Shown here in pieces: positions 976 through 61,705 of a DNA stretch of 64,000 nucleotides. The notes beneath the pieces are model-generated. The model was not told where the DNA came from. It saw only the letters and a program-made list of their open reading frames with translations, and ran no database searches. This DNA is from Octopus sinensis (lineage: Eukaryota). The stretch is from NCBI RefSeq assembly GCF_006345805.1, contig NC_043016.1, positions 7,998,001-8,062,000 of the forward strand, read 5' to 3'. The position numbers and the translations under genes were made by a program. The stretch's first letter is position 1, and each line of letters opens with the position of its first letter.

Positions 976-1538
976 GTAAAAAAAAACAAAAAACAAATTC
1001 GTGAACAGCTGTTTTATCTTAGAAGAAAGTTATAATTATAAAATGCAAAAAAAAGAAAAAAATATTTGAATGATCTGACTGATACCTCTTTTTTATCAGC
1101 TTAGCTGTGTTAGATTCCACTGAAGAAGAAAAAACATGGTTTTTAGAAAATTTTTTTCTGATTTTGTTTTTATATAAAAATGTTCATTAAAATAGGCATG
1201 GTTCAGTAAGGCTAAAATATTCCTTTCTAATGCAACCACAAGGGCTGAAATTGGTGGGGAATGAGTCTAGTCAGTTACAACGACCCCAGTGCAAAGTCAA
1301 TCCCGATGGAATTTGAACTCAGAGCGCAAGTGCGGGCGAAATACTGCAAAGCGTCTCGTTCGACTTGCTAACAATTCTGCCATCTCAATATGGCTCCGAT
1401 ACTAGAAGTGGGAGTATTTCCGTTTCAAAGTTTTTGAGAGGTAATTACTAGGCGAAAAGCCATTTTTATTCGATTATAATTTTTATTTAAAGAAAAGGGG
1501 GGTGCAGATCTTTTCTAAAAACTCATGAAAAAAATGAA

Positions 1539-1950
1539 GGATCTTTTCGGTTTGACCGGCAGTTTTTTAAAATAATTTTCACGTAACTAAACACTTTTAA
1601 ACTTCGTATACTGGTAGAATGTGTTTATAAAACATCTTTTTTTCTCTTGGCTTTATTGAGAAAATTCTATAGTTTGTAAGATATTTGTTGTTTTTCTTCT
1701 TCAATTTCTGGAATTTCAACCAATCAATCACGTCCATTGAGGTGAAAAACATTCTGTGCCGTATGAATATGTCCCTCGTTTAAGAAACAGATTGGGTTTA
1801 TTTACATTTGTGAAGAAAAAAAGATACACTTCCCCCACCCCTAACCTAAAACACATGGAAATGCAATAGATCGATACTAGGGTCATAATTATGGGTGACA
1901 ATTTCATATGATACTGCTAGAAAAAACTGCCGTTCAATCCGAAAAGATCC
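1539..1950. mobile_element. MITE family M1, copy 1 (~30-bp TIR GGATCTTTTCGGTTTGA.CGGCAGTTTTTT)
   Basis: TIRs at both ends. 8-bp flanks AAAATGAA / AAAATCGA match 6/8. Internal sequence is shared with five other copies in the window. Confidence 0.9.
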
Positions 1951-3827: not shown

Positions 3828-4412
3828 TCTACTCTGGGCACAAGGCCGAAATTTTGGCGGAGGGGACCAGTCGATTAGATCGACCTCAGTACGCAACTGG
3901 TACTTAATTTATCGACCCCGAAAGGATGAAAGGCAAAGTCGATCTCGGCGGAATTTGAACTCAGAACGTAGCGGCAGACGAAATGCCTATTTCTTTACTA
4001 CCCACAAGGGGCTAAATACAGAGAGGACAAACAAGGACAGACACACGGATTAAGTCGATTATATCGACCCCAGTGCGTAACTGGTACTTATTTAATCGAC
4101 CCCGAAAGGATGAAAGGCAAAGTCGACCTCGGCGGAATTTGAACTCAGAACGTAGCGGCAGACGAAATACCTATTTCCCATTTGTTTACTACCCACAAGG
4201 GGCTAAACACAGAGAAGACAAACAAGCACAGACAAACGGATTAAGTCGATTATAATCGACCCCAGTGCGTTACTGGTACTTATTTAATCGACCCCGAAAG
4301 GATGAAAGGCAAAGTCGACCTCGGTGGAATTTGAACACAGAATTTGAACGGCAGACGAAATACTGCTAAGCATTTTGCCCGGCGTGCTAACGATTCTGCC
4401 AGCTCACCGCCT
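3828..4412 (-). mobile_element. SINE family A head-to-tail trimer
   Basis: Three GAAAGGCAAAGTCGA cores (~3930, 4115, 4305). Only the rightmost unit keeps the tRNA head. Confidence 0.9.
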
Positions 4413-6364: not shown

Positions 6365-6794
6365 GGATCTTTTCGGTTTGAACGGCAGTTTTTTCTAGCG
6401 GTGTCATATGAAATTGTCACCCATAATTATGACCCTAGAATCGATCTATTGCATTTCAATCTCTTTTAGGGTAATGGTTAGTTAGGGTTAGGGTTAGGAG
6501 TGGGGAAGGGTATCTTTTCTTCAGAAATGTAAATAAACCCAATCTGTTTCTTAAACAAGGGACATATTCATACGGCACAGAATGCTTTTTAACTCAATAG
6601 ACGTCATTGATTGGTTGAAATTGCAGAAATTGAAGAAAAACAAACAACAAATATCTTACAAACAATAGAATTTTCTCAATAAAGCCAAGAGAAAAAGATG
6701 TTTTATAAACACATTCTACCAGTATACGAAGTTTAAAAGTGTTTAGTTACGTGGAAATTATTTTAAAAAACTGCCGGTCAAACCGGAAAGATCC
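6365..6794. mobile_element. MITE family M1, copy 2, flanked by a 134-bp direct duplication
   Basis: TIRs GGATCTTTTCGG... / ...CCGGAAAGATCC. 6223-6356 is repeated at 6795-6929. Confidence 0.9.
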
Positions 6795-6830
6795 TAATTG
6801 TATTCAACATTCATTAATTTCATGTTTCAG

Positions 6831-7487: not shown

Positions 7488-8381
7488 ACGCTGGCAGAAC
7501 CGTTAGCGCGCCGGGTGAAATGCTAAGCGGTATTTCGTCTGTCGTTACGTTCTGAGTTCAAATTCCGCCGAGGTCGACTTTGCCTTTCATCCTTTCGGGG
7601 TCGATAAATAAAGTACCAGTTACGCACTGGGGTCCATGTAATCGACTTAATGTCTGTCCTTGTTTGTCTCCTCTGTGTTTAGTCCCTTGTGGGTAGTAAA
7701 GAAATATATATACACACTCACCCAGTCCGACAATATATATATTCCCTTTCGCCTGTTGACTCATCGGGAAGCATAAGCAAAACTATATTTTGGCGGACTA
7801 GCGGCGAGCTGGCAGAAACGTTAGCAGGCCGGGCGAAATGCTTAGCGGTATTTCGTCTGCGTTACGTTGTGAGTTCAAATTCTGCCGAGGTCGACTTTGC
7901 CTTTCATCCTTTCGGGGTCGATAAATAAAGTACCAGTTACGCACTGGGGTCGATGTAATCGACTTAATACCTATGTCTGTCCTTGTTTGTCTCCTCTGTG
8001 TTTAGCTCCTTGTGGGTAATAAAGAAATAGGTATTTCGTCTGTCGTTACGTTCTGAGTTCAAATCCGCCGAGGTCGACTTTGCCTTTCATCCTTTCGGGG
8101 TCGATAAATTAAGTACCAGTTACGCACTGGGGTCGATGTAATCGACTTAATACCTATGTCTGTCCTTGTTTGTCCCCTCTCTGTTTAGCCCCTTGAGGGT
8201 AGTAAAGAAATAGGTATTTCGTCTGCGGTTACGTTCTGAGTTCAAATTCCGCCGAGGTCGACTTTGCCTTTCATCCTTTCGGGGTCGATTAAATATGAAC
8301 CAGTCAATCACTTGTACAATCGACTTAATCCCCTTGTTTGTCCCCTCTATGTTTAGCCCCCTGTGGGCAATAAAGAAATAT
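7488..8381 (+). mobile_element. SINE family A cluster: one single copy (7488-7705) plus a head-to-tail trimer (7800-8381)
   Basis: Four cores, with AAAGAAATAG|GTATTTCGTC junctions at ~8030 and ~8213. Confidence 0.9.
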
Positions 8382-8505: not shown

Positions 8506-9217
8506 CAGTGGCTCACAATCATTTTTTTTTTTTCACCTGTGTATCCTTTCGATTCCAATTTTACTCAGGTGGATCTTCATAGCCATTTAATACTTTAAAA
8601 AAAAAAATCCTGTTGTATATTATACTTGAATATTATAAGGAATTGTGTTAAAAAAAAAATTGTTAAAATACTTTGCGTATCATGGAAGTAAAACCGATTT
8701 TATTGCATCTAAACTTTAACCAAAAAAAAAAAAAATCGGATCTTTTCGGTTTGAACGGCAGTTTTTTCTAGCGGTGTCATATGAAATTGTCACCCATAAT
8801 TATGACCCTAGTATCGATCTATTGCATTTCAATCTGTTTTAGGGTTAGGGGTGGGAGAAGGGTATCTTTTTTTTTTCTTTACAAATGTAAATACACCCAA
8901 TCTGTTTCTTAAACGAGGGACATATTCATACGGCACAGAATGTTTTCAGCTCAATAGACGTCATTGATTGGTTGAAATTGCAGAAATTGAAGAAAAAAAA
9001 CAACAAATATGTTACAAACTATAGAATTTTCTCAATAAAGCCAAGAGAAAAAAAAGATGTTTTATAAACACATTCTACCAGTATACGAAGTTTAAAAGTG
9101 TTTAGTTACGTGGAAATTATTTAAAAAAAACTGCCGGTCAAACCGAAAAGATCCAAAAAATCTTACAAGGACCTCCTTCCTCCCCAGGGTCATATGGACC
9201 CCGGCTGAGAAACACTG
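8506..9217. mobile_element. hAT (Charlie-like) MITE hosting a nested M1 copy
   Basis: Ends CAGTGGCTCACAA / GCTGAGAAACACTG. The left flank CTCTAGAA fits the NTCTAGAN Charlie target; the right flank is decayed. Confidence 0.6.
8738..9154. mobile_element. MITE family M1, copy 3, with a perfect 8-bp TSD AAAAAATC
   Basis: Both TIRs are intact. AAAAAATC lies at 8730-8737 and 9155-9162. Confidence 0.92.
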
Positions 9218-15097: not shown

Positions 15098-15197
15098 NNN
15101 NNNNNNNNNNNNNNNNNNNNNNNNNNNNNNNNNNNNNNNNNNNNNNNNNNNNNNNNNNNNNNNNNNNNNNNNNNNNNNNNNNNNNNNNNNNNNNNNN
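15098..15197. other. Assembly gap (100 N)
   Basis: Run of N. Confidence 1.
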
Positions 15198-16279: not shown

Positions 16280-16290
16280 TCTCAATATAG

Positions 16291-16321
<31 letters not shown>

Positions 16322-16342
16322 TATATATATATATATGATATT

Positions 16343-16374
<32 letters not shown>

Positions 16375-18330
16375 ATATATTTATATATATATTATATATA
16401 TATATATATTTATATATAATAATATTTATATATTATATTTATATATATATATATGTATATATATGTTTATATATATATTTATATATATATATATGTATGT
16501 ATATATATGTTGATATATATATATGGATGTATATATGTTTATATATATATATATATGTATGTATATATATAATATGTATGTATATATGTAATATGGTATG
16601 TAATATGTATATATGTTTATGGTTATATATATATAATGTATGTATATATATATATGTATGTATATATATATATATGTATGTATATATGTATATATATGTT
16701 TATATATATATGTATGTATATATATGTTTATATATTTATATATTTATATATATATCATATTTATATCTATACATATATATATATATTATAATATATATAT
16801 GTAATATAATATATATATATATATTTATATATATATACATATATAATATATTATATATATATATATATATATATACATATATAATATTATAATACTATAT
16901 ATATATAATATTATATATATACATATATAGAATAAATTATATATATAATATATATATAAATTATAATAATACATATATATATAATACTATATATATATAT
17001 ATAATATTTTATATATATATATATATACATATATATATACTATATATAATATAATATTATTATATATATATAATATTTTATATATATATATATATATACA
17101 TACATAGTATATATATAATATTATATATATATACATATAATATATAAATTATATATATATATAATATACATATATATATATATTTATTATAATATAAATA
17201 TTTTTTAATATTTATATATATATATGAAGATATATATATATATATATAATAATACATATATATATATAATATATATATAATATATAATATATATATATTA
17301 TATTAATATATACATATATATAATAATATTATATATATATATATATATATATTATACATATATATAATATTATATATATATCTATATACATATATATATA
17401 ATATTATATATATATATATATATACATATTATATATATTATATAGAGGGCTAGCAGCAGGGCTTTGCCTAATACCGAAGGCCTTTTACCAAGGAATTTGG
17501 AGGGAAAATTTACGTCCCAGTCGTTACTTAATTTTAACATCTGCACACTTCCCCCCACTATCTGATGTCGCTGGGTCAGAAGTGAGGGCCTGTGGCATTT
17601 GGTAAATCTATCGAATATAGCGCCGATGAAGGAAATCAAAATACTTTTCTGAGTTTGTGATCCAGAAACATGTTCATTATTAACGGTAAGTGACTGTTTG
17701 CGTCTATTTGCTACTCCGGTTTTGTGTATGTGAGCCGCACGGACCTTCGTTTTTGGAATCTCCACTTACAGAAAATGGAAAAAACAGTCTTTGACTGCCA
17801 TTTCTAATTCCTTCGGTATGAGGCAAAGCAGCCTGCTGCTAGCCCTCTTATTTACCTTACTATATACTGAACCTTACAAAGTTCCTGACGATGAATTTGT
17901 CGTATTTACATACCGAAATTTACCGGTAAATAATTGTTGGTTACATGAAAAACCACAGAAAAATTATTTACCATTTTTATTGCATTATATATTATATATA
18001 TATATAATATACAATATATATAATATTATATATATATCATATATATATTATATTTATATATATATATATATACATATATATATAATATTATATAGATATA
18101 CATATATATATAATATTATATATATATATATATTTATAATATTATATATATATATATACTACATATATATAATATTATATATATATATAATATTATATTA
18201 TATATGTATATATATTATATATATATATATACATATATATATATAATATTATATATATATATATTATATTATATATATATATATATATACATATATATAT
18301 AATATTATATATAGTGTATATATATATCCC
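16280..18330. repeat. ~2-kb degenerate (TA)n field interrupted by a TIR element
   Basis: Almost pure A/T except 17444-17985. Confidence 0.95.
17444..17848. mobile_element. Non-autonomous TIR element (37-39-bp TIR AGAGGGCTAGCAGCAGG..GCTTTGCCTMATACCGAAGG)
   Basis: Arms 17444-17480 and 17810-17848 differ by one mismatch and a 2-nt indel. Confidence 0.75.
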
Positions 18331-19155: not shown

Positions 19156-19678
19156 TATTTGTTTCAGTTCCTGTCTGCCGAATCTACTGACATGACTTTG
19201 GTTGGCCTGAGGCTATTGTAGAAGACACTTGCCCAAGGTGCCATACAGCTGGACTGAACCTGAAACCATGTGGTTGAAAAGCAAGTTTCTTACCACACAG
19301 CCTTGATTGTTCAATCTTTTTTTTTTCTTACCTATGTCATAGCACATCCTTTAAAAAAATTTTTTTTTGATCCTCTTTTCCATGCAGTTACCTTCTCAGA
19401 TCAGAACAGTCACTCATATTCACCAAATAATTTTGTTTTACCTCTTGCTTAAACAAATTCTCACTGATTTTTCCTTTTTTCTTATGTATGTGTCTTCCAT
19501 ATCCATGAAGAATTGTTGTTCTCTACTTTTCTCTACAGTTCATCAATCACTGTTCTGCTATCTTTCCCAAGTCTAATTTCAACAGGGTTATGTACGTAGT
19601 TAATCTAGCTATAAATTCAACGTGTATTCCATCTTCACAGGAAACCCCATACACAATAATGCTCACACAACTTCTCAA

Positions 19679-22600
19679 CCATTTAGCATTGAAATTACTC
19701 TCTCAGTCAAATGTAATGCTTATTCATTCACATTTTGAGAGTGCAATGATGTGATTGTTTATTTTTAGAATGGTGCTGAAGGGTAGGTATGAAAGACCAG
19801 ATCTGGTCAATTTGAACACAAAACAGGTTGAATATTTGGAACCAGATTTGGTCAGTTTAAACACAAAATAGGTTGAATATTTGGAACCAGATTTGGTCAG
19901 TTTAAACACAAAATAGGTTGAATATTTGGAACCAGATTTGGTCAGTTTAAGCACAAAATAGGTTGAATATTTGGAACCAGATTTGGTCAGTTTAAACACA
20001 AAACAGGTTGAATATTTGGAACCAGATTTGGTCAGTTTAAACACAAAATAGGTTGAATATTTGGAACCAGATTTGGTCAGTTTAACACAAAATAGTTTGA
20101 ATATTTGGAACCAGATTTGGTCAGTTTAAACACAAAATAGATTGAATATTTGGAACCAGATTTGGTCAGTTTAAACACAAAATAGGTTGAATATTTGGAA
20201 CCAGATTTGGTCAGTTTAAACACAAAATAGGTTGAATATTTGGAACCAGATTTGGTCAGTTTAAACACAAAATAGGTTGAATATTTGGAACCAGATTTGG
20301 TCAGTTTAAACACAAAATAGGTTGAATATTTGGAACCAGATTTGGTCAGTTTAAACACAAAATAGGTTGAATATTTGGAACCAGATTTGGTCAGTTTAAA
20401 CACAAAACAGGTTGAATATTTGGAACCAGATTTGGTCAGTTTAAACACAAAACAGGTTGAATATTTGGAACCAGATTTAGTCAGTTTAAACACAAAACAG
20501 GTTGAATATTTGGAACCAGATTTGGTCAGTTTAAACACAAAACAGGTTGAATATTTGGAACCAGATTTGGTCAGTTTAAACACAAAACAGGTTGAATATT
20601 TGGAACCAGATTTGGTCAGTTTAAACACAAAACAGTTGAATATTTGGAACCAGATTGGTCAGTTTAAACACAAAACAGGTTGAATATTTGGAACCAGATT
20701 TGGTCAGTTTAAACACAAAAAGGTTGAATATTTGGAACCAGATTTGGTCAGTTTAAACACAAAACAGGTTGAATATTTGGAACCAATTTGGTTAGTTTAA
20801 ACACAAAATAGGTTGAATATTTGGAACCAGATCTGGTCAGTTTAACACAAAATAGGTTGAATATTTGGAACCAGATCTGGTCAGTTTAAACACAAAATAG
20901 TTGTGAATATTTGGAACCAGATTTGGTCAGTTTAAACACAAAATAGGTTGAATATTTGGAACCAGATTTGGTCAGTTTAAACACAAAATAGATTGAATAT
21001 TTGGAACCAGATTTGGTCAGTTTAAACACAAAATAGGTTGAATATTGGAACCAGATTTGGTCAGTTTAAACACAAAATAGGTTGAATATTGGAACCAGAT
21101 TTGGTCAGTTTAACACAAAATAGGTTGAATATTTGGAACCAGATTTGGTCAGTTTAAACACAAAATAGGTGAATATTGGAACCAGATTTGGTCAGTTTAA
21201 ACACAAAATAGGTTGAATATTTGGAACCAGATTTGGTCAGTTTAAACACAAAACAGGTTGAATATTTGGAACCAGATTTGGTCATTTTAAACACAAAACA
21301 TGTTGAATATTTGGAACCAGATTTAGTCAGTTTTAAACACAAAACAGGTTGAATATTTGGAACCAGATTTGGTCAGTTTAAACACAAAACAGGTTGAATA
21401 TTTGGAACCAGATTTGGTCAGTTTAAACACAAAACAGGTTGAATATTTGGAACCAGATTTGGTCAGTTTAAACACAAAATAGGTTGAATATTTGGAACCA
21501 GATTTGGTCAGTTTAAACACAAAACAGGTTGAATATTTGGAACCAGATTTGGTTAGTTTAAACACAAAATAGGTTGAATATTTGAAACCAGATCTGGTCA
21601 GTTTAAACACAAAATAGGTTGAATATTTGGAACCAGATCTGGTCAGTTTAAACACAAAATAGGTTGAATATTTGGAACCAGATTTGGTCAGTTTAAACCA
21701 AAATAGGTTGAATATGGAACCAGATTTGGTCAGTTTAAACACAAAATAGGTTGAATATTTGGAACCAGATTGGTCAGTTTAAGCACAAAATAGGTTGAAT
21801 ATTTGGAACCAGATTTGGTCAGTTTAAACACAAAATAGGTTGAATATTTGGAACCAGATTTGGTCAGTTTAAACACAAAATAGGTTGAATATTTGGAACC
21901 AGATTTGGTCAGTTTAAACACAAAATAGGTTGAATATTTGGAACCAGATTTGGTCAGTTTAAACACCAAAACAGGTTGAATATTTGGAACCAGATTTGGT
22001 CAGTTTAAACACAAAAAGGTTGAATATTTGGAACCAGATTTGGTCAGTTTAAACACAAAATAGGTTGAATATTTGGAACCAGATTTGGTCAGTTTAAGCA
22101 CAAAATAGGTTGAATATTTGGAACCAGATTTGGTCAGTTAAACACAAAATAGGTTGAATATTTGGAACCAGATTTGGTCAGTTAAACACAAAATAGGTTG
22201 AATATTTGGAACCAGATTTGGTCAGTTTAAACACAAATATAGGTTGAATATTTGGAACCAGATTTGGTCAGTTTAAACACAAAACAGGTTGAATATTTGG
22301 AACCAGATTTGGTCAGTTTTAAACACAAAACAGGTTGAATATTTGGAACCAGATTTAGTCAGTTTAAACACAAAACAGGTTGAATATTTGGAACCAGATT
22401 TGGTCAGTTTAAACACAAAACAGGTTGAATATTTGGAACCAGATTTGGTCAGTTAAACACAAAATAGGTTGAATATTTGGAACCAGATTGGTCAGTTTAA
22501 ACACAAAACAAGTTGAATATTTGGAACCAGATTTGGTCAGTTTAAACACAAATAGGTTGAATATTTGGAACCGATCTGGTCAGTTTAAACACAAAATAGG

Positions 22601-23004
22601 TTGAATATTTGGAACCAGATTTGGTCAGTTTAAACACAAAACAGGTTGAATATTTGGAACCAGATTTGGTCAGTTTAAACACAAAATAGGTTGAATATTT
22701 GGAACCAGATTTGGTCAGTTTAAACACAAAATAGGTTGAATATTTGGAACCAGATTTCGTCAGTTTAAACACAAAATAGGTTGAATATTTGGAACCAGAT
22801 TTGGTCAGTTTAAACACAAAACAGGTTGAATATTTTGAACCAGACCTGGTCAGTTTGAACACAAAACAGGTGAAATATTTTGAGCCAGATTTGGTCAGTT
22901 TGAACATAAAACAAGTGAACTATTTTGAGCCAGACCTGGTCAGTTTGAATACATAACAGGTTGAATATTTTGAACCAGATCTGATCAGTTTAAATGCTGA
23001 AGAG
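19679..23004. mobile_element. piggyBac-like MITE (family P1) inflated by an internal satellite
   Basis: TCAA|CCATTTAGCATT ... AATGCTGAAGAG|TTAA. Its non-array body matches the sister copy at 23517-24136. Confidence 0.75.
19796..22995 (+). repeat. 45-bp tandem satellite, ~71 units (GGAACCAGATTTGGTCAGTTTAAACACAAAAYAGGTTGAATATTT)
   Basis: The 45-bp period was read directly and agrees with the 15-aa periodic ORFs. No spacers. Confidence 0.98.
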
Positions 23005-23516
23005 TTAAAGTCCTCATGTAAATAGCACTTCCATTCATGTGACCACTCCAAAATGCTTTCCCTGTGATGCCAATCAGTTCTTCTATCAAAATTATTTTTG
23101 TCAAGAAACTGTCAACTTCTTTGTTATTGCAATATTAGGCTTGGAACACGAGCGCTTCTTCAAAATTCATCCACACCTATTTGGACAATTTTTATTTCAT
23201 TGTTTTATTTAATTAATTTTTTTTCTAGATCTGTTTACCATACTTGCTTCTATGTAACTCCTACCTGTTTTTGTAGTATGTGTTTTAATGTTTCTTGTGG
23301 CAAACAAATATGTAACTGGATGAATAAGTACTTTATGAATAAATATTTCAATATATTCGTCCTCATCATCATTATTACTATTATTAACATTATTTCATTA
23401 TTTAAGGTGGTGAGCAGGTAAAATGCCGCCAAGCATTTTACCTGTCTTTACATTCTGACTTCAAATGATACAAGGATTTTTGCCTTCCCCTTTTCATCAT
23501 CACCACTATTCTCCAG

Positions 23517-24136
23517 CCTTTTAGCATTCACATTATTCTATCGAATGTAATGCTTGTTTATTCACATTGTTTTGAATTAATTATACGTTACCTTGTAGCT
23601 TTGAAACTTCAATGATATGATTGTATATTTTTAGAATGACATTTTAAGGTAGGTACGAGAGACTGTCTCCAACAATTTGGTGCGACAGCAGTGCAGAATC
23701 ACATCCCTCCGACAAGTCATCCTAACGAGACGTCTGCGTTGGCTGGGTCATGCCCTCCGTCGTCAACCAGGAGAATTCATCTATGAAGCAATTGCCCCAG
23801 CTCTCCTTCAGGGTTGGCGAAAGCGATGTGGTGGACAACGAGAAACCTGGCTGATGACAGTCAAGGCTGATCTGGAACCCAACCTTTGCCCCCTACCTAT
23901 GGCGTTCGCTGCTGGAATAAGGAGTGGTTGGAGATCACGCAGTCGTTAGCCTCAAATTGCCAGGTCTGGTCGGCATTTGTGAGAGATGCAGCACTGAGGA
24001 TGAATGAAGCCAGCTCAACCCACCCCGGGTGAATGCTGTCTCAAGTCAAGTCAAGTCAGTCTGGATCTAGCCAGTTTGAACATAAAAAACAAATAGTAAA
24101 TTCAGGCTCGATATGGCTGATTTAAATGCTAAAGAA
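23517..24136. mobile_element. Second P1 MITE copy, interrupted by an RTE fragment
   Basis: CCTTTTAGCATT ... AATGCTAAAGAA. Body homologous to 19679-19795, with ~1.5 diverged copies of the 45-mer seed at 24061-24130. Confidence 0.8.
23664..24060 (+). mobile_element. 5'-truncated RTE-clade LINE (ORF C-terminus, frameshifted) with a (CAAGT)n tail
   Basis: RRLRWLGHALRR...WRKRCGGQRETWLMTVKADLE, then after a frameshift YGVRCWNKEWLE...WSAFVRDA...STHPG* (TGA at 24030-24032). These are typical RTE C-terminal motifs. Confidence 0.88.
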
Positions 24137-25909
24137 CTAGAGAAGACCTTTCCCTGAGTCACAATCCTGATCACTGAAATCCTTTGTAAATTATCTCCAC
24201 CATCTTTACACCAACCACCTGTATACACACACCTTCCCTAGCCTTATTTTCTTTTCATTTCATACATACCTCCTTTTCCTTTCTTATCTCACTCTCTCTA
24301 ATAATTCGAATTTAAATATGTAGGTTATTAATATTTTATTGCAACCCCTTAAAAACACTGAGTTTTTTTTTTTTCTTTCTTTTTCTTTACTGCTGTGTTT
24401 TCTTTTTTCTAATTTAGTTGGCAGGGCTGTGTCCTCATTCAGCTTGACAAGCAACTACCTAATAATATCACCTCCTACCTCCACTCGTCATTGTTTCTTT
24501 TCCTTTTCCTTTCCTTCTATGCCCACTACATCCTGAGTTAAAGCATCCAGCTTCTACAGCCAAAAGAGGAGTCCCTTAAGAAGTGATCACCTAGATAACT
24601 AGAAATAGCAGCTATATATCTCTCAAATCACACCTGTTCTTGCATGTACATACAGACACTCAAATGCCAAACACACACACACAGACTTAAAAGAAAAAAG
24701 AAAAAGAAAGGACACGTTGGATAATGAGTTTTTGATCCACCACAGGTAACCTGTGGGTCCCATGGAATTCTCAGAAAATTTACCTTTAATTTATTTTTCA
24801 TAGGTGCAGACCATCTGATAAATGAGCTCAACGGAAGGTTGCCCATGCCTCTTCTAGACATACTGTGTTTGAGAAGTAGGACATGATGGTCATAACTAGG
24901 AATGTCTTTGATCATAGGTTTGCCAAGATCAGGAATGTATTGGTGGCAGAATGGTGTGTGTGTGTATGTGTGTGTGTGTGTCTGTGTGTGTTAGACCTGG
25001 GAAATCAACAGCCAGCAAAAGCGACATCCCTGTCCACTCCCCCACCCCACTCATAACCCCCGCCAACCCACCTTTTTGCATTAGACTAAAACTGCCTGAG
25101 GTGTGAGGACTAACATGGTGAAAGCAACAGGAAGAACAACAATAACTACTACAACTACCATCCAGTGAATGCTATTATGATAATCACTATAAATACCATC
25201 ACTGTGCCCGCCTCCCACCCGTCTCTCTCCTCCTCCACCCCCACCCTAACTCTTGATTCATCTTTAATTATCCATTTGCTACTTCAGCTCTTTGTCTCAC
25301 ACCTTTAAACACTTCTTCTTCTTCTTTCTTTCTTCTTCAAGTCAGTCAGTAACTGTGTCACACCAACTCTTTCAAAAACACCACCCTGATTTACCTCCCC
25401 CTTTTCCTTCTTTGACTATCTGTCTGCCTGCTTGTCCGGCTGTCTGAGTCCCTTCTCTGTCTCTGCATGTCTCTCTCTTCCTTTCTCTCTTTCTTGCTCA
25501 TTCTCTCTGTTGCTGTTAATATACATACAGCTTATATTACTAATAACCTTTTGCATTTCAAGTAAAGAAAATTAATGACAATTAATGATGGTTGATGATG
25601 ATGACTATGATAATGGCTAGAGGTGATGATAACGAGGGTGTGTTTTTTGTTGTCTAATCCTAAAGTCAATCCTTATTGAGCAGTGCTGTCTTTCATGATC
25701 TTTAACATTCCTACAATGACCAATCCTATTTTAGTTTCAGTCTTGCTGTATGGTTTGAAAGATATTTGGCTGCTATTTCTAGTAGCCTCATAAACTGATT
25801 CTTTCATTGTCTTATGACCATTATTGAGTTAGCTCCCAGGCTGCATCCTGATTGAGCAGACAGATGAATAAAGGCACTGCAATAACCCACCAGTTGTTTC
25901 ATATATATA

Positions 25910-31750: not shown

Positions 31751-32140
31751 GTTTTTTTAAATAATTTCCACGTAACTAAATACTTTCAAACTTCGTATAC
31801 TGGTAGAATGTGTTTATAAAACATCTTTTTCTCTTGGCTTTATTGAGAAAATTCTATAGTTTGTAACATATTTGTTGGGTTTTTTTCTTCAGTTTCTGCA
31901 ATTTCAACCAATCAGTGACGTTTATTGAGGTAAAAAAAACATTCTGTGCCGTATGAATATGTCCCTCGTTTAAGAAACAGATTGGGTTTATTTACATTTC
32001 TGAAGAAAAAAGGTACCCTTCCCCCCACCCCTAACCCTAAAACACATTGAAATGCAATAGATCGATACTAGGGTCATAATTATGGGTGACAATTTCATAT
32101 GACACCGCTAGAAAAAACTGCCGTTCAAACCGAAAAGATG
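31751..32140. mobile_element. MITE family M1, copy 4 (left TIR lost)
   Basis: Internal body plus right TIR AAAAAACTGCCGTTCAAACCGAAAAGAT. Confidence 0.88.
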
Positions 32141-32791
32141 CATTTTTTGTAAGCCTACTACTTATTCTATCAAACTCTTTTGTCGATCCGCTAATATTCA
32201 ACTTCAGACTTTAAAAGTCATTCGTTTATGCATGGACTTTCAGTTAAAATTATTAGTTTTTTTTTTTCTTTTAAATCCGGAAACTGATTGTGGTTAGAGG
32301 ATTTGTACTTTTCTTTTATTCGTAATAAATATATTTTCGTTTGCACTTTAAGTGTATAAATAATAATTTTTTTTGTTGTCACATTTTATATCCACAATAA
32401 ACAGAAATTTTAAACAGCAGCATTAAAAAAAAATGTTTGTAAAGTTAAACAATTTAATTTTTTTAAATGCAAACAAAATACATTCATACATTACAAATAT
32501 GAACACCAAATAAAAAGTCAAACTGCTATAAACCCCCTAAGCCTAATAAATTCCTGATTTAAAATAATAACACAATTGTTTTGTTTGTTTTTTAAAGTAA
32601 GCAAATTTTTAAAATTTAAGAAAAAACAATTTTTTTAAAGGAAAACATTCTTTAATATATATACATATATTATGTCCGAATCGCTAGTATAAAAATAACA
32701 AATACTTGTTCTAAAGGCATAATTTAAAAAATCGGGATACCTAAAATATTTAAGAGTGTACCGGTAGATATAGCATGTTTCTTTAAAACAG

Positions 32792-32852: not shown

Positions 32853-33404
32853 GTAAGTCCCATGGGCCGCAGTAAGCCAACACAGCTATAAAGTATGCTA
32901 GGTATGAATGGAATTATAATTCTTTCTTATTTTGGTATAACGCCTGCAACTTTGAGGGGTGGGGAAGTCGATTCTTCAACCCCGTGCTTTAATAGAATTT
33001 ATTTCATAGATCCTGCAAGGACGAAAGGCAAAGTTGACCTCGGCATTATTTAAACTCGGAATGTAAAGCCAGAAGAAATATGTTAACCGGTGCAGTAATG
33101 ATTTTGCCAGCTCGCTGCCTTATTATAATTCCAAAACTGGAATTATAATAAAAGCAGCGAAGCATTAGCAGATACGATAACTGACCTAGTGCACGTTTAC
33201 TTAACACTTAACGTCATAAACCGCCCCCAATCCGCGCCTCGCCACTAGGCACACAAACGGGTTGCACAGGATATGACCCGTAACATTTCAAGGTCACGTA
33301 TGCGCACATTCTAAACATACCTATCCGTTTTTAGTCTCTTTAACCAAATCCTTCTATGAACAAGGAGAAATGTATATAAGTGAAATGTATATAAGTTAAA
33401 TATA

Positions 33405-33820
33405 TTTCTTTATTGCCCACAGGGGGCTAAACATAGAGGGGACAAACAAGGACAGACAAAGGGATTAAGTCGATTACATCGACCTCAGTGCGAAACTGGT
33501 ACTTTTTTATCGACCCCGAAAAGATGAAAGGCGAAGTCGACCTCGGCGGATTTGAACTCAGAACGTAACGACAGACGAAATACCTATTTCTTTACTACCC
33601 ACAAGGGGCTAAACACAGAGAGGACAAACAAAGACAGACAAACGGATTAAGTCGATTACATCGATCCCCAGTGCGTAACTGGTACTTAATTTATCGACCC
33701 CGAAAGGATGAGAGGCAAAGTCAACCTCGGCGGAATTTTAACTCAGAAAGTAACCGGCAGACGAAATACGGCTGCGCATTTCGCCCGGCGTGCTAACGGT
33801 TCTGCCAGCTCGCCGCCTTC
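33405..33820 (-). mobile_element. SINE family A head-to-tail dimer
   Basis: Two cores, with the GACGAAATAC|CTATTTCTTT junction at ~33583. Confidence 0.9.
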
Positions 33821-36984: not shown

Positions 36985-37388
36985 GGATCTTTTCGGTTTG
37001 AACGGCAGTTTTTTCTAGCGGTGTCATATGAAATTGTCACCTATAATTATGACCCTAGTATCGATCTATTGCATTTCAATTTGTTTTAGGGTTAGGGGTG
37101 AGGGAAGGGTATCTTTTTTTCTTCAGAAATGTAAATAAACCCAATCTGTTTCTTAAACGAGGGACACATTCATACGGCACAGAATGTTTTCACCTCAATA
37201 GACGTCATTGATTGGTTGAAATTGCAGAAATTGAAGAAAAAAACCCAACAAATATGTTACAAACTATAGAATTTTCTCAATAAAGCCAAGAGAAAAAGAT
37301 GGTTTATAAACACATTCTACCAGTATACGAAGTTTAAAAGTGTTTAGTTTCGTGGAAATTATTTGAAAAAACTGCCGTTCAAACCGAA
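36985..37388. mobile_element. MITE family M1, copy 5 (right TIR clipped)
   Basis: Left TIR intact and body conserved. Confidence 0.9.
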
Positions 37389-38055: not shown

Positions 38056-38537
38056 GTTACAAATATATGCCAGTAAAAACCTGTACACCCGGCCTTATCC
38101 TATCACTATTAGAAGAGTTATATTATTTTCTTAATTCGCATGATGATATTGTATTCATTATTATATTTACGAGATTTGTAAGAAAAATGCTGTGAAGTTC
38201 AGATAAATGGTTTGAAAATGATTTAAAAGCAGATATTTGAAACATCTACATACTATAGAACTAAATAGTTGTAGGACATTATTATCTATTTTTTTTTTTT
38301 TTTTTTTTTTGCTGTTATTCTTTAGCCGCAGGTCAGCCGCGATCGATCTCATTTATGATCAAAGGAATTCCAACGGTAACTTCCTTTGTCAACTTGCACT
38401 GTCAGAAAATTAACAGGTGAAACCATAGATTACACACGTGAGAAGAGTGTAACCAACAAACGGCAACTATTATTCTCCTATTAACTATAAACCTCGCCAT
38501 CCACCCCTCCCACACGCAGACACAAGCGCGCGTGCAT

Positions 38538-38918
38538 TTAAAATAATTTCCCCGAAACTAAACACTTTTAATCTTCGTATACCGGTAGAATGTGTTTATA
38601 AAACATCTTTTTCTCTTGGCTTTATTGAGAAAATTCTATAGTTTGTAAGATATTTGTTGTTTTTTTCTTCAATTTCTGCAATTTCAACCAATCAATGACG
38701 TCTATTTTAGGTGAAAACATTCTGTGCCGTATGAATATGTCCCTCGTTTAAGAAACAGATTGGGTTTATTTACATTTGTGAAGAAAAAAAGATACTCTTC
38801 CCCCCATCCCTAACCCTAAAACAGATTGAAATGCAATAGATCGATACTAGGGTCATAATTATGGGTGACAATTTCATGACACCGCTAGAAAAAACTGCCG
38901 TTCAAACCGAAAAGATCC
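38538..38918. mobile_element. MITE family M1, copy 6 (left TIR lost)
   Basis: Body plus intact right TIR ending AAAAGATCC. Confidence 0.88.
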
Positions 38919-39718
38919 AAAAATTCTTTCATTTTGTTTTATTGACTGTCGCAATCTACTGGGTGTTTCTTTTTTCCTTTCTTCTTTACATATGTGTTAT
39001 ATATTTAGTAATTACATTACATATTATGCAGTTTGTGTTTTTTATGTGCGCTATCCCTCCGGTCTGCGCTGAAATTGCCTAGCATGAAATGGAGTCGCAG
39101 TGCAAAAGCGGTTGGAGACCATTGTATTACATGACCGATTACTTTATTTTATCGATCCCGAAAAGTCGGTGATACCAGCGGGATTTGAACCTAGAAAGTA
39201 AAGGAAACGTGTCATTTCTGTCTGTCTATCTGTCTGTGTGTGTGTGTCTCTCTCTCTCCGAAAAAAAAGTTTTGTGTGAGGACTTCGTCTGATTAAAAGA
39301 AAAAATTGTATATTATTTTATCCATATAGAGAAAATCCATATTTTTTGAACAGGCAAACGTGTGTGGTAAGAATATACGCAATCATGGCTTACATCCCCG
39401 TAATTAAGCAGTTTGGCAAAAGAATCATTGACATTTAAAAAATGGAGTTAATTTGTGCGGCCCTTCTAGGCGGTACCCCCAGCATGGTTTCAGTCTAATC
39501 TCTGGGACAAGTAAAACAAGAAAATGGCAGTAAGGCTACATGATAGTGGTATCAGATGTTGCATGCACACCACCATATAACGTGTTTTTCTTTGCTTTCG
39601 TTTTATTTTGACATGGACATTGTGTTTTTTTTTTCCGTTTTACGAATTCAGTGTGCACAATCGCATTGCGTGTTCATACTTCGTTTTCCGGCTCCTACTC
39701 AAAACTGTTTACAGATCA

Positions 39719-52150: not shown

Positions 52151-52159
52151 TTTTTTTAT

Positions 52160-52496
52160 GGGGGGGGTGCAGAAATATAGGGGAGCACCAGTGGGAGGGG
52201 TGGTTCAGAGGACAGGTTCTAGGCAAGTAGAACGTAGGATATCGAGAGAGGGGTAATGCATGGTGAAATGGCGTATTGAAGAGGGGGGTTCAAAGAGTAG
52301 ACACCTATAATGGTGGTGGTGGGGGTGCAGAAAATAGGGGAGCACCAGCGGGAGGGGTGGTTCAGAGGACAGGTTTCTAGGCAAGTAGAGTACGTAGGAT
52401 ATCGAGAGAGGGGTAATGCATGGTGAAATAGCGTTATTGAAGAGGGGGGTTCAAAGAGTAGACACCTATATGGTGGTGGGGGGGTGCAGAAATATA
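52160..52496 (+). repeat. ~160-bp G/A-rich tandem repeat, 2.1 units
   Basis: GGGGTGCAGAAA recurs at ~52163, 52322 and 52481, with matching interiors. Confidence 0.85.
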
Positions 52497-55250: not shown

Positions 55251-55360
55251 GCACCTTCTTATGGTCCTTGTGTTATTACATTATCCTATGTATTTTGCTA
55301 CAAGCTTATGGATAGATGTGTGGCACACCAGTTCAACCTACTTACATACTCTTGTTGTCC

Positions 55361-55520
55361 ATATCGTCCCATCTGCCTGTGCCCAACATATTCTCATTGT
55401 CAATATAGTCCCATCTGCCTCTGCCCAACATATTCTCATTGTCAATATAGTCCCATCTGCCTCTGCCCAACATATTCTCATTGTCAATATAGTCCCATCT
55501 GCCTGTGCCCAACTCATATT
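55361..55520 (+). repeat. 42-bp minisatellite, ~3.8 units
   Basis: ATAGTCCCATCTGCCTSTGCCCAACATATTCTCATTGTCAAT repeats. Confidence 0.92.
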
Positions 55521-59475: not shown

Positions 59476-60371
59476 ATTCACTAGAAAATAATCTAAAAAA
59501 AAACATTAAAATGTCTGTTTAAAGAAAGCTAAGGTATAAATGCTTACTGTACAAACAACTTACATTTTTGAAATCACATTCAGTTAAAAATATTGTGTCT
59601 GTCAATAAGTTGACATTTTTTTTTCTCTTAGAGAGTGTGAAGACTGTGTGTGTGTGTATATGTCACAGATAGTGGCCGTGTGTTTGTGTTGATTGATATA
59701 CCATGACATTTATTATATGTGTATGTATTCTGTATGTGTCGATGTCATGGAAGCAATAACAAACAAAAATTGTGTTTAATCGCTTTTGTTAATAAATAGA
59801 GGTCCAAATATCACAGATATTTGTACTGCACTGCTGAAGGTAAGTATGAAAATAAATATGCAAAAAAAGAAATGAAATAAATATCTATTTCTCAGATATT
59901 TCGGGTATACACAAACACCTCTAGAATTTTAATATTATGAAGATTTTATATATATATATATATATGTTTACATTTATACTAGCTTATAACCTGCTATTGG
60001 GTGGCTTTTAAGCTGGTTTCTGTGGAGGGCTCTTCATTGGGCCTTGAGTCCAATAATGACACTTCATGCATTAGGTACATGTTAAATTTTATTAAACTTG
60101 ACCTATATTTTTCAAGCAATGAACAATTTTCATCAAAACAATGATATAATATGTGAACTTGGAACTTACTGCAAAGCTTCATGATAAACAACATTTTTCG
60201 TTTTCCCATTCGGGGGTCAGTGCAATTTTTTTTTTTGTCTAACCTCTTTGTTTCTGTTGATTGTTTTCAACGATCACCACTACGCCACCACAACTGCCAT
60301 ACACACACGCCGTTCAGACTTCTGACGCCACCACTATCAACACCTTTGACTTCGCTGCCTTCCCTCCATCA

Positions 60372-60471
60372 NNNNNNNNNNNNNNNNNNNNNNNNNNNNN
60401 NNNNNNNNNNNNNNNNNNNNNNNNNNNNNNNNNNNNNNNNNNNNNNNNNNNNNNNNNNNNNNNNNNNNNNN
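60372..60471. other. Assembly gap (100 N) flanked by a ~925-bp duplicated contig overlap
   Basis: 59448-60371 reappears at 60472-61397, with mostly 1-nt indel differences. Confidence 0.9.
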
Positions 60472-61705
60472 GTTCTGAGAGTCAAAGTGAAATATTGCAA
60501 TTCACTAGAAAATAATCTAAAAAAAAACATTAAAATGTCTGTTAAAGAGAAGCTAAGGTATAAATGCTTACTGTACAAACAACTTACATTTTTGAAATCA
60601 CATTCATTTAAAAATATTGTGTCTGTCATAGTTGACATTTTTTTTCTCTTAGAGAGTGTGAAGACTGTGTGTGGGTGTATATTCACAGATAGTGGCCGTG
60701 TGTTGTGTTGAGTTGATATACCATGACATTTATTATATGTGTAATGTATTCTGTATGTGTCGATGTCATGGAAGCAATAACAACAAAAATTGTGTTTAAT
60801 CGCTTTTGTTAATAATAGAGGTCCAAATATCACAGATATTTGTACTGCACTGCTGAGGTAGTAATGAAAATAAATATGCAAAAAAAGAAATGAAATAAAT
60901 ATCTATTTCTCAGATATTTCGGTATACACAAACACCTCTAGAATTTTAATATTATGAAGATTTTTATATATATATATATATGTTTACATTTATACTAGCT
61001 TATAACCTGCTATTGGGTGGCTTTTAAGCTGGTTTCTGTGGAGGGCTCTTCATTGGGCCTTGAGTCCAATAATGACACTTCATGCATTAGGTACATGTTA
61101 AATTTTATTAACTTGACCTATATTTTTCAAGCAATGAACAATTTTCATCAATCAAACACAATGATAGATATGTGAACTTGGAACTACTTACTGCAAAGCT
61201 TCATGATAAACAACATTTTTCGTTTCCCTTCCCATCGGGGTCAGTGCAATTTTTTTTTCTGTCTAACCTCTTTGTTTCTGTTGATTGTTTTCAACGATCA
61301 CCACTATCGCCACCACAACTGCCATACACACACGCCGTTCAGACTTCTGACGCCACCACTATCAACACCTTTGACTTCGCTGCCTTCCCCTCCATCACCA
61401 TCACCATTGTCTTTCATGTCCCTTTCTATCGCCGTCATGCTTGACCGCCTCACTACTGCCACCGCCATCATCACCGTCGCTTCTGCCTCTATCACAACTA
61501 TAGCTCATACTATTACTATCACTCCATTACCATCTCAACTGTCAGCCTACTACCACCCTCACTGCCTTATGCCTACCATTACCCTCACCCTAGAAAGAGG
61601 AGTAGAAGAAATGTCATTGAATAGCAATAGCGGGAGTCAAAGTGTGACACACTGACACACAGAAATTCATTTTGGCATTTACTATTATATATATATATAT
61701 ATACA

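What the first reader, a model, noticed from the sequence alone, without database searches (positions are those of the whole stretch)
19679..23008. 3.2-kb, 45-bp satellite born inside a piggyBac-like MITE
Seen: ~71 near-identical 45-mers lie between degenerate TTAA|CCCTTTAGCATT-type ends. A sister MITE 500 bp downstream has the same body but only ~1.5 diverged seed units. The terminal array units are more diverged and keep the ancestral TTTGAAC, while the interior has TTTAAAC. Inference: a snapshot of transposon-to-satellite conversion with interior homogenisation. If the ends are still recognised, the array could be mobilised as a unit.
Basis: partly seen in the sequence, partly recalled or inferred. 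Interest (0 to 1): 0.7.

Follow-up and report, generated by a model that had tools for sequence, protein, structure and literature searches.

The report
Minisatellite grown inside an old MITE
One copy of an old, decayed miniature transposon has had its short internal 45-bp repeat blown up to about 71 copies (3.2 kb), which is a clear but ordinary example of a transposon seeding a tandem array, a process already described in clams, oysters and fruit flies.

Summary
TRF finds one array at 19796-22994: period 45, 71.5 copies, 95% matches. It lies between a 124-bp left arm and a roughly 20-bp right end that form an imperfect inverted repeat.

A second copy at 23509-24144 has the same arm (78% identity, K2P 0.26), the same inverted ends, and only about 1.6 degenerate units.

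Unit 1 and units 69-71 are 9-18% from the consensus and carry TTTGAAC. Units 2-68 are 1.5% from it and carry TTTAAAC. The sister copy has TTTGAAC, so the edge state is ancestral.

Variants recur in blocks about 17-22 units apart, which points to multi-unit unequal exchange. The element held at least five old units before the recent burst.

Three claims are not established:
- "piggyBac": TTAA is intact at 1 of 4 ends, and in copy 2 the inverted symmetry runs past it.
- "satellite": only one array could be seen.
- mobilisation of the array as a unit.

The source genome could not be searched, and all external scans were empty. I rate this a new member of a known kind, of modest interest.

The parts
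19672..19795 (+). Copy 1, left arm of the non-autonomous element. The inverted-repeat core CCATTTAGCATT starts at 19679. The outer TTCTC starts at 19672.
   Evidence: Homology to copy 2 begins here. The terminus matches the reverse complement of the right end at 19 of 34 positions, P=4e-4.
19796..19840 (+). Array unit 1, an old edge unit with C8, G19 (TTTGAAC) and C29.
   Evidence: 8.9% from the consensus. Its states match the sister copy.
19841..22838 (+). Array units 2-68, the recently amplified or homogenised interior. All carry A19 (TTTAAAC). C29/T29 variants occur in blocks.
   Evidence: TRF and the unit table. Mean divergence from the consensus is 1.5%. Neighbouring units are more alike than in shuffled order, with dips at lags 17-19 and 38-40.
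22839..22973 (+). Array units 69-71, old edge units with G19 and T43.
   Evidence: 13.6-17.8% from the consensus and 11-16% from each other.
22974..23010 (+). Terminal partial unit fused to the right inverted repeat (AATGCTGAAGAG at 22993-23004, then TTAA at 23005-23008).
23509..23663 (+). Copy 2, left arm. TTCT is at 23509-23512 and CCTTTTAGCATT at 23517-23528. It carries a 32-bp insertion relative to copy 1.
   Evidence: 78% identity to the copy 1 arm. The 25-nt inverted repeat 23509-23533 / 24120-24144 is 76% complementary. The termini match at 22 of 34 positions, P=6e-6.
23664..24059 (+). 5'-truncated LINE (non-LTR retrotransposon) 3' end. It comprises the ORF2 C-terminus with one frameshift, a stop at 24030-24032 and a (GTCAA)3 tail. 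It is inserted exactly at the arm/array junction of copy 2.
   Evidence: ORFs. 209 relatives at E<=1e-3. The long relatives carry Exo_endo_phos and RVT_1 domains, and the match falls at their extreme C-terminus.
24060..24144 (+). Copy 2, about 1.6 degenerate 45/46-bp units (TTTGAAC at 24075-24081) fused to the right inverted repeat.

Best explanation
An old, non-coding DNA transposon of the MITE type inserted twice, 500 bp apart and in the same orientation. Ancestrally it was about 250-300 bp long, with imperfect terminal inverted repeats of about 20-30 nt around a TTTAGCATT core. The family already carried a short tandem duplication of about 45 bp directly inside the right inverted repeat. 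In copy 1 this internal mini-array grew in place in at least two phases. An older phase produced at least five units, which are now 9-16% diverged from each other. A recent phase amplified one derived variant (T8, A19) to about 67 units by replication slippage and unequal sister-chromatid exchange, including duplication of blocks of about 17-22 units (0.8-1 kb). Units at the two edges take part in such exchanges least, so they kept the ancestral states. The array most likely has no function. Shown here: the array, the two copies, the inverted ends, the edge/interior polarity, the block structure and the LINE insert. Inferred: the recombination mechanism, neutrality and the order of events.
For: - Array.
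- Unit table and diagnostic sites.
- The two copies share the arm and the ends but not the flanks, so they are separate insertions and not a segmental duplication.
- The inverted-repeat arms coincide with the limits of homology between the copies.
- In both copies the last partial unit is continuous with the right inverted repeat, so the repeat is the element's own sequence.
- The sister copy has C8, G19 and C29-like states, which polarises the edge states as ancestral.
- Adjacent units are more alike than in shuffled order (lag 1: 0 of 2000 shuffles reach the observed value). Similarity returns at lags 17-19 (P=0.0045) and 38-40 (P=0.0095).
- Rare variants recur at that spacing: a10 at units 16, 35 and 58; t13 followed by c8,c8 at units 23-25 and 40-42; a32 at units 8 and 27.
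- There is no coding signal. The 183-aa open frame is a by-product of 45 = 3 x 15 and has no relatives.
- The process is documented elsewhere: DTC84 (PMC3879986), Tetris (PMC4079207) and Cg_HINE (PMC7492417).
Against: - Only two copies of the element and one array could be examined. The source genome is not in any searchable collection.
- No target-site duplication could be defined, so transposition is inferred from structure alone.
- Low interior divergence is equally compatible with an old array under continuous turnover.
- The window is a scaffolded draft with two 100-N gaps.
- Twenty-four of the 67 interior units are not 45 bp long. Fifteen of 22 deleted bases lie in homopolymer runs (P=0.002), which fits long-read consensus error, so copy number and unit-level indels may be inexact.
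Confidence: 0.7

Rival explanations
1. The array length is an assembly artefact. A short internal repeat was over-expanded, or a longer one collapsed, by a noisy long-read assembler.
For: The window has two 100-N gaps, so it is a scaffolded draft. One-base deletions outnumber insertions 22 to 5 and concentrate in homopolymers, as expected from unpolished long-read consensus.
Against: Substitution variants are ordered and not random. There are C29 runs, recurring multi-unit patterns, a hybrid unit 68 and graded old edge units. Both junctions to unique sequence are clean. Some identical indels sit in adjacent units (28-29, 53-54), as expected from real duplication.
Confidence: 0.1
2. The carrier is a non-autonomous Helentron (HINE / DINE-1-like) element and not a cut-and-paste MITE. 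That is the usual carrier of satellite-like central repeats in molluscs.
For: - The layout is similar: a left flank, a central tandem repeat and a short inverted repeat on each side (PMC7492417, PMC4067079).
- A short sequence complementary to the 5' repeat core (AATGCTT) lies 20-24 nt inside the left arm (read).
- No target-site duplication is visible, and a T precedes TCTC at both left ends.
- A (GTCAA)3 microsatellite sits just before the units in copy 2.
Against: - Homology between the copies stops about 10-14 nt after the 3' inverted repeat. There is no conserved 38-60-nt 3' segment.
- The 90 nt downstream fold no better than shuffles (z = +1.4 and +2.1), so there is no 3' palindrome.
- Copy 1 has no microsatellite, and the one in copy 2 is best read as the LINE tail.
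- The inverted symmetry reaches the very ends in copy 2.
Confidence: 0.1
3. The long array is the ancestral state of the family, or a pre-existing satellite captured by it. Copy 2 is then a remnant that lost its units.
For: The LINE in copy 2 sits exactly where the array would begin, and LINE integration can delete target DNA (established knowledge). Arrays under concerted evolution look young whatever their age.
Against: - Across the LINE, copy 2 resumes at the exact next homologous base (GAC|CAG...CTGG, compared with copy 1). A deletion would therefore have to be an in-register whole number of units.
- The remaining units of copy 2 are about as decayed as its arm.
- In both copies the terminal partial unit is continuous with the inverted repeat.
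Confidence: 0.1

Closest known systems
DTC84 and 'pearl'-type tandem-repeat-containing MITEs of bivalves (Donax trunculus, Crassostrea virginica; PMC3879986)
   Same: It is a non-coding element with short inverted repeats in the flanks and a central array of core repeats whose copy number varies between copies. Each unit holds a palindrome near the unit junction: ancestral CCAGATCTGG, and GTTTAAAC in the derived unit.
   Different: DTC84 has up to five core repeats, a linked microsatellite and a putative AA target-site duplication. Here one copy has about 71 units, copy 1 has no microsatellite and no AA duplication is seen. There is no sequence similarity.
Tetris / TIR-220 of Drosophila virilis (PMC4079207)
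   Same: Internal tandem repeats of a non-autonomous DNA transposon served as building blocks for kb-size arrays.
   Different: Tetris is a foldback element whose repeats lie inside long terminal inverted repeats. Its arrays were shown at many loci and by FISH. Here the repeat is a 45-mer next to a short inverted repeat, and only one array is known.
Cg_HINE, non-autonomous Helentrons carrying satellite-like repeats in Crassostrea gigas (PMC7492417), and DINE-1/HINE (PMC4067079)
   Same: The modular layout of flank, central tandem repeat and flank with short inverted repeats is shared, in what is probably also a mollusc host.
   Different: The defining 3' palindrome and the conserved 3' segment beyond the inverted repeat are absent.
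piggyBac/TTAA-type MITEs, e.g. coral CMITEs with CCCTTTAAGCCC-type ends (PMC2872659)
   Same: The consensus of the four termini, YYAR|CYCTTTAGCATT, resembles TTAA plus a CC[C/T]T-initiated inverted repeat. All departures from TTAA are transitions.
   Different: Only one TTAA and one CC[C/T]T start are intact. The inverted symmetry continues beyond the TTAA position in copy 2. No transposase-bearing partner is available.

Membership tests
Tandem repeat array (minisatellite scale) | Head-to-tail copies of a 10-100 bp unit, far above chance | tested here: met
   TRF finds period 45, 71.5 copies, 95% matches and score 5672.
Satellite DNA family | The same unit in long arrays at several loci, or high genomic abundance | not testable with these tools
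   There is one array in the 64-kb window. Scans of metagenome, prokaryote-genome and protein collections were empty. The source genome is not searchable.
MITE (miniature inverted-repeat transposable element) | Terminal inverted repeats at the limits of the repeated unit | tested here: met
   Copy 2 has a 25-nt inverted repeat, 76% complementary. Termini match at 22 of 34 positions (P=6e-6) in copy 2 and 19 of 34 (P=4e-4) in copy 1. The arms coincide with the limits of homology between copies.
MITE (miniature inverted-repeat transposable element) | Small, non-coding, and present in several dispersed copies with unrelated flanks | tested here: met
   Without the array and the LINE the element is about 240-300 bp. 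The ORFs have no homologues. There are two copies with unrelated flanks, but only two, so copy number in the genome is unknown.
MITE (miniature inverted-repeat transposable element) | Target-site duplication flanking each copy | tested here: inconclusive
   No matching direct repeat lies outside the outermost symmetric bases. The TTAA reading needs 5 transitions in 16 positions.
piggyBac / TTAA superfamily | TTAA target-site duplication | tested here: inconclusive
   The four ends read TCAA, CCAG, TTAA and CTAG. In copy 2, 5 of the 6 nt outside them are also inverted-symmetric (P about 0.007), which argues that the element extends further out. A T-rich/A-rich target preference could mimic this.
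piggyBac / TTAA superfamily | 12-19 bp inverted repeats starting with CC[C/T]T (as stated in PMC2872659) | tested here: inconclusive
   The starts are CCAT, CCTT, CTCT and TTCT. Only one of the four fits, although the column consensus CYCT does fit.
piggyBac / TTAA superfamily | Shared ends with a transposase-encoding partner | not testable with these tools
   There is no further copy in the window, and the source genome is not searchable.
HINE / DINE-1-like non-autonomous Helentron | A palindrome (stem-loop) and a conserved 38-60-nt segment 3' of the 3' subterminal repeat (PMC4067079, PMC7492417) | tested here: not met
   Homology between the copies ends 10-14 nt after the repeat. The downstream 90 nt fold worse than shuffles (z +1.4 and +2.1).
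HINE / DINE-1-like non-autonomous Helentron | A microsatellite at the end of the left flank, and insertion at TT without a target-site duplication | tested here: inconclusive
   Copy 1 has no microsatellite. The (GTCAA)3 in copy 2 adjoins the LINE stop codon and is best read as its tail. A T precedes TCTC at both left ends, and no duplication is seen.

The most novel reading that the evidence does not exclude
The 45-mer could be the founding locus, or one member, of a genome-wide and possibly centromere-associated satellite family of a cephalopod-like genome. In that case it would be dispersed by this MITE, so that arrays elsewhere all carry its arms. That would give a dated, stepwise series from transposon to satellite in a group whose satellite DNA is almost unstudied.
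Probability: 0.1. Interest if true: 0.5.

Novelty: new member of a known kind. Interest (0 to 1): 0.25.

Why it matters
This locus preserves an unusually readable series. A sister copy has about 1.6 old units. Copy 1 keeps old edge units at 9-18% divergence, a hybrid unit (68), and a young interior at 1.5% divergence with block duplications. It therefore works as a textbook-quality illustration of how a transposon-internal duplication grows into a kilobase array and why the array edges stay ancestral. It does not change what is known, because the same process is documented in bivalves and Drosophila. It would gain weight only if the 45-mer proved to be a genome-wide satellite in the source species.

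Tried and rejected
- I searched for further copies of the element in the window with BLAST, degenerate patterns with up to 3 mismatches and nhmmer profiles of both arms. Only the two copies were found.
- I searched for the array or the arm elsewhere: two metagenome scans and one prokaryote-genome scan gave 0 hits.
- I searched the 183-aa open frame of the array as a protein, hoping to catch ORFs called on related arrays in public assemblies. There was no candidate.
- I searched the LINE ORF with the word-indexed protein search to identify the source organism and found nothing.
- Rfam and tRNA scans of the whole window were empty.
- I rejected a coding repeat protein, because the frames are broken by indels and there are no homologues.
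- I rejected a segmental duplication as the origin of the two copies, because the flanks are unrelated.
- I rejected the HINE assignment, because there is no 3' palindrome.
- The identification of the host as an octopus-like cephalopod rests only on my recollection of its abundant SINE sequences. No tool confirmed it.
Full report

Yes. Tandem Repeats Finder reports a single array at 19796-22994 with period 45, 71.5 copies, 95% matches, 1% indels and score 5672. This is by far the strongest array in the window.

I segmented it unit by unit against the consensus ACCAGATTTGGTCAGTTTAAACACAAAATAGGTTGAATATTTGGA. There are 71 full units and a terminal partial unit.
- Units 2-68 differ from the consensus by 1.5% on average, counting substitutions only.
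- Unit 1 differs by 8.9%.
- Units 69-71 differ by 13.6-17.8%.
- G at unit position 19 (TTTGAAC) is found only in units 1, 69, 70 and 71. All interior units have A (TTTAAAC).

**2. What carries the array?**

The array lies between a 124-bp left arm (19672-19795) and a very short right end (22974-23010).

A second copy lies at 23509-24144, in the same orientation and 500 bp downstream.
- Its left arm matches that of copy 1 at 78% identity (alignment). The p-distance is 0.21 and K2P is 0.26 over 122 aligned positions. It has one 32-bp indel.
- Its tail is homologous to the last units plus right end of copy 1. The local score is 47 against 20.7 +/- 4.2 for shuffles, and 0 of 2000 shuffles reach it. 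The unit part alone gives P=0.006.
- It has an internal 46-nt periodicity, with 57% self-identity against about 30% at neighbouring offsets. That amounts to about 1.6 degenerate units.

The sequences outside the two copies are unrelated. They are therefore separate insertions and not a segmental duplication.

The limits of homology coincide with inverted repeats.
- Copy 2 has a 25-nt repeat, 23509-23533 against 24120-24144, that is 76% complementary.
- Anchored on the AGCATT core and without gaps, the termini match at 22 of 34 positions in copy 2 (P=6e-6) and 19 of 34 in copy 1 (P=4e-4).

The element has no coding capacity. The long open frames in the array follow from 45 = 3 x 15, and the 183-aa frame has no relatives.

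No other copy exists in the window, by BLAST, pattern search and nhmmer profiles.

This is a non-autonomous element with terminal inverted repeats, that is, a MITE in the structural sense.

**3.

Copy 2 is interrupted at 23664-24059.
- The insert encodes ...RRLRWLGHALRR..., followed after one frameshift by a 48-aa frame ending in a stop at 24030-24032. A (GTCAA)3 tail follows (read).
- An exhaustive HMMER search finds 209 relatives at E<=1e-3.
- The long relatives carry Exo_endo_phos and RVT_1 domains, and the match lies at their extreme C-terminus, for example residues 912-976 of 1024.

So the insert is a 5'-truncated LINE 3' end.

It sits exactly at the arm/array junction. Across it, copy 2 resumes at the next homologous base (GAGAGAC | CAGTCTGG... 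against GAAAGAC CAGATCTGG... in copy 1). The LINE therefore probably did not remove units.

**4. Polarity and mode of growth**

The unit of copy 2 has GATCT, TTTGAAC and a C29-like state, the same as the edge units of copy 1. The edge states are therefore ancestral, and T8, A19 and T29 are derived.

Units 1, 68, 69, 70 and 71 differ from each other by 9-16%. This is less than the arms of the two copies differ (21%) and far more than the interior units differ. Copy 1 therefore already held at least five units long before the last burst.

Unit 68 is a hybrid. It has interior states at positions 8 and 19 and edge states at positions 29 and 43.

The order of units within the interior is not random.
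- Adjacent units are more alike than in shuffled order (lag 1: 0.0191 against 0.0248 +/- 0.0014, 0 of 2000 shuffles).
- Similarity returns at lags 17-19 (P=0.0045) and 38-40 (P=0.0095).
- Rare variants recur at that spacing:
  - a10 at units 16, 35 and 58;
  - t13 followed by c8,c8 at units 23-25 and 40-42;
  - a32 at units 8 and 27;
  - an extra T at units 35 and 57;
  - runs of C29 at units 14-22, 33-39 and 56-61.

The interior thus looks like about three copies of a block of about 17-22 units. This is what unequal exchange of multi-unit segments produces. That edge units escape such exchange is the established expectation for tandem arrays. It is an inference here and was not shown.

The last partial unit (ACCAGATCTGATCAGTTTAAATGC...) runs directly into the right inverted repeat in both copies. 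The repeat was therefore made from the element's own sequence next to that end.

The ancestral unit holds a perfect 10-bp palindrome, CCAGATCTGG, at the unit junction. The derived unit lost it (CCAGATTTGG) and gained GTTTAAAC. DTC84 units also carry a palindrome near the junction (PMC3879986). Whether this matters is unknown.

**5. Which transposon superfamily?**

The four termini read as follows:
- L1: TCAA|CCATTTAGCATT
- L2: CCAG|CCTTTTAGCATT
- R1 (reverse complement): TTAA|CTCTTCAGCATT
- R2 (reverse complement): CTAG|TTCTTTAGCATT

Their consensus, YYAR|CYCTTTAGCATT, is compatible with a decayed TTAA plus a CC[C/T]T start. These are the hallmarks of piggyBac-type elements as given in PMC2872659. 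All five departures from TTAA are transitions.

Three points weaken this reading.
- Only one TTAA and one CC[C/T]T start are intact.
- In copy 2, 5 of the next 6 outward bases are also inverted-symmetric (T.TTCT). I calculate P of about 0.007 from the 0.274 match rate.
- TTCTC also precedes the left end of copy 1.

Either the element extends beyond the 'TTAA', or a T-rich/A-rich target preference mimics symmetry. I leave the superfamily unresolved.

I also tested the Helentron-derived alternative (HINE / DINE-1-like), which is the usual carrier of satellite-like repeats in oysters (PMC7492417, PMC4067079). Its defining 3' palindrome and its conserved 38-60-nt segment beyond the 3' repeat are absent. 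Homology ends 10-14 nt after the repeat, and the downstream 90 nt fold worse than shuffles.

**6. Caveats**

The window is a scaffolded draft with 100-N gaps at 15098-15197 and 60372-60471.

Twenty-four of the 67 interior units are not 45 bp long. Deletions outnumber insertions 22 to 5, and 15 of 22 deleted bases lie in runs of three or more identical bases (P=0.002). This is the signature of long-read consensus error, although some identical indels sit in adjacent units. The exact copy number and the indels should not be trusted. The ordered substitution pattern argues that the array is real.

The source genome could not be searched. Metagenome, prokaryote-genome and protein-collection searches all came back empty.

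From memory only, the very abundant 184-bp and roughly 400-bp interspersed repeats of the window resemble octopus SINEs. No tool confirmed the organism.

**7. Comparison with what is known, and verdict**

Internal tandem repeats of non-autonomous DNA transposons that vary in copy number and expand into kb arrays are documented in several systems:
- DTC84 and pearl elements in bivalves (PMC3879986);
- Tetris in Drosophila virilis (PMC4079207);
- Helentron-derived Cg_HINE in the Pacific oyster (PMC7492417).

A recent repeat annotation of Octopus vulgaris lists piggyBac and MITE families, and the word 'satellite' does not occur in its main text (PMC13282606).

The locus is a clean new example of a known process and not a new kind of element.
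- The core of the interpretation (transposon-internal repeat to array, old edges, young interior) is supported.
- The labels 'piggyBac' and 'satellite', and the idea of mobilisation as a unit, are not established. Mobilisation looks unlikely given how decayed the ends are.

Interest is modest at 0.25.

Noticed in passing
window 23664-24059: A 5'-truncated LINE 3' end (ORF2 C-terminus with one frameshift, a stop, and a (GTCAA)3 tail) is inserted exactly at the arm/array junction of the sister copy. This is next to the CCAG.TCTGG palindrome. No clear target-site duplication is visible.
   Followed up: yes
window 19797-19806 and every unit junction; 19811-19818 in derived units: The ancestral unit carries a perfect 10-bp palindrome, CCAGATCTGG. 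The amplified unit lost it (CCAGATTTGG) and gained the 8-bp palindrome GTTTAAAC. A dimer of either unit type folds somewhat better than shuffles as single-stranded DNA (z about -2.1 and -2.3).
   Followed up: partly
window 15098-15197 and 60372-60471: There are two runs of exactly 100 N, so the window comes from a scaffolded draft assembly. ORFs at 60181-60711 and 61203-61655 share their first ~60 residues, which suggests a local duplication about 1 kb apart next to the second gap. It could be an assembly artefact.
   Followed up: no
window 3869-4363 (+), 7847-8304 (-), 33398-33820: An abundant ~184-bp interspersed repeat, with more than 15 copies in the window, also occurs as head-to-tail dimers and trimers. 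Two such mini-arrays lie in inverted orientation about 3.5 kb apart. This is another case of a dispersed element forming short tandem arrays.
   Followed up: no
window 1538-1950, 6365-6797, 8738-9157, 31751-32142, 36985-37388, 38537-38922: Six copies of a ~400-bp repeat at 88-95% identity, in both orientations. This is a much younger interspersed family than the MITE studied here.
   Followed up: no
window 55344-55513 and 52159-52496: Two further short arrays with long units: 42 bp x 4.0 at 94% identity and 160 bp x 2.1 at 92% identity. Their context was not examined.
   Followed up: no
window 16285-17444 and 17986-18327: Very long, impure (AT)n tracts of 1.16 kb and 0.34 kb lie 2-3 kb upstream of the array. 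GC drops to 19% there.
   Followed up: no
window 23569-23600: The left arm of the sister copy has a 32-bp segment (TGTTTTGAATTAATTATACGTTACCTTGTAGC) that copy 1 lacks. Whether it is an insertion or a deletion cannot be told from two copies.
   Followed up: partly
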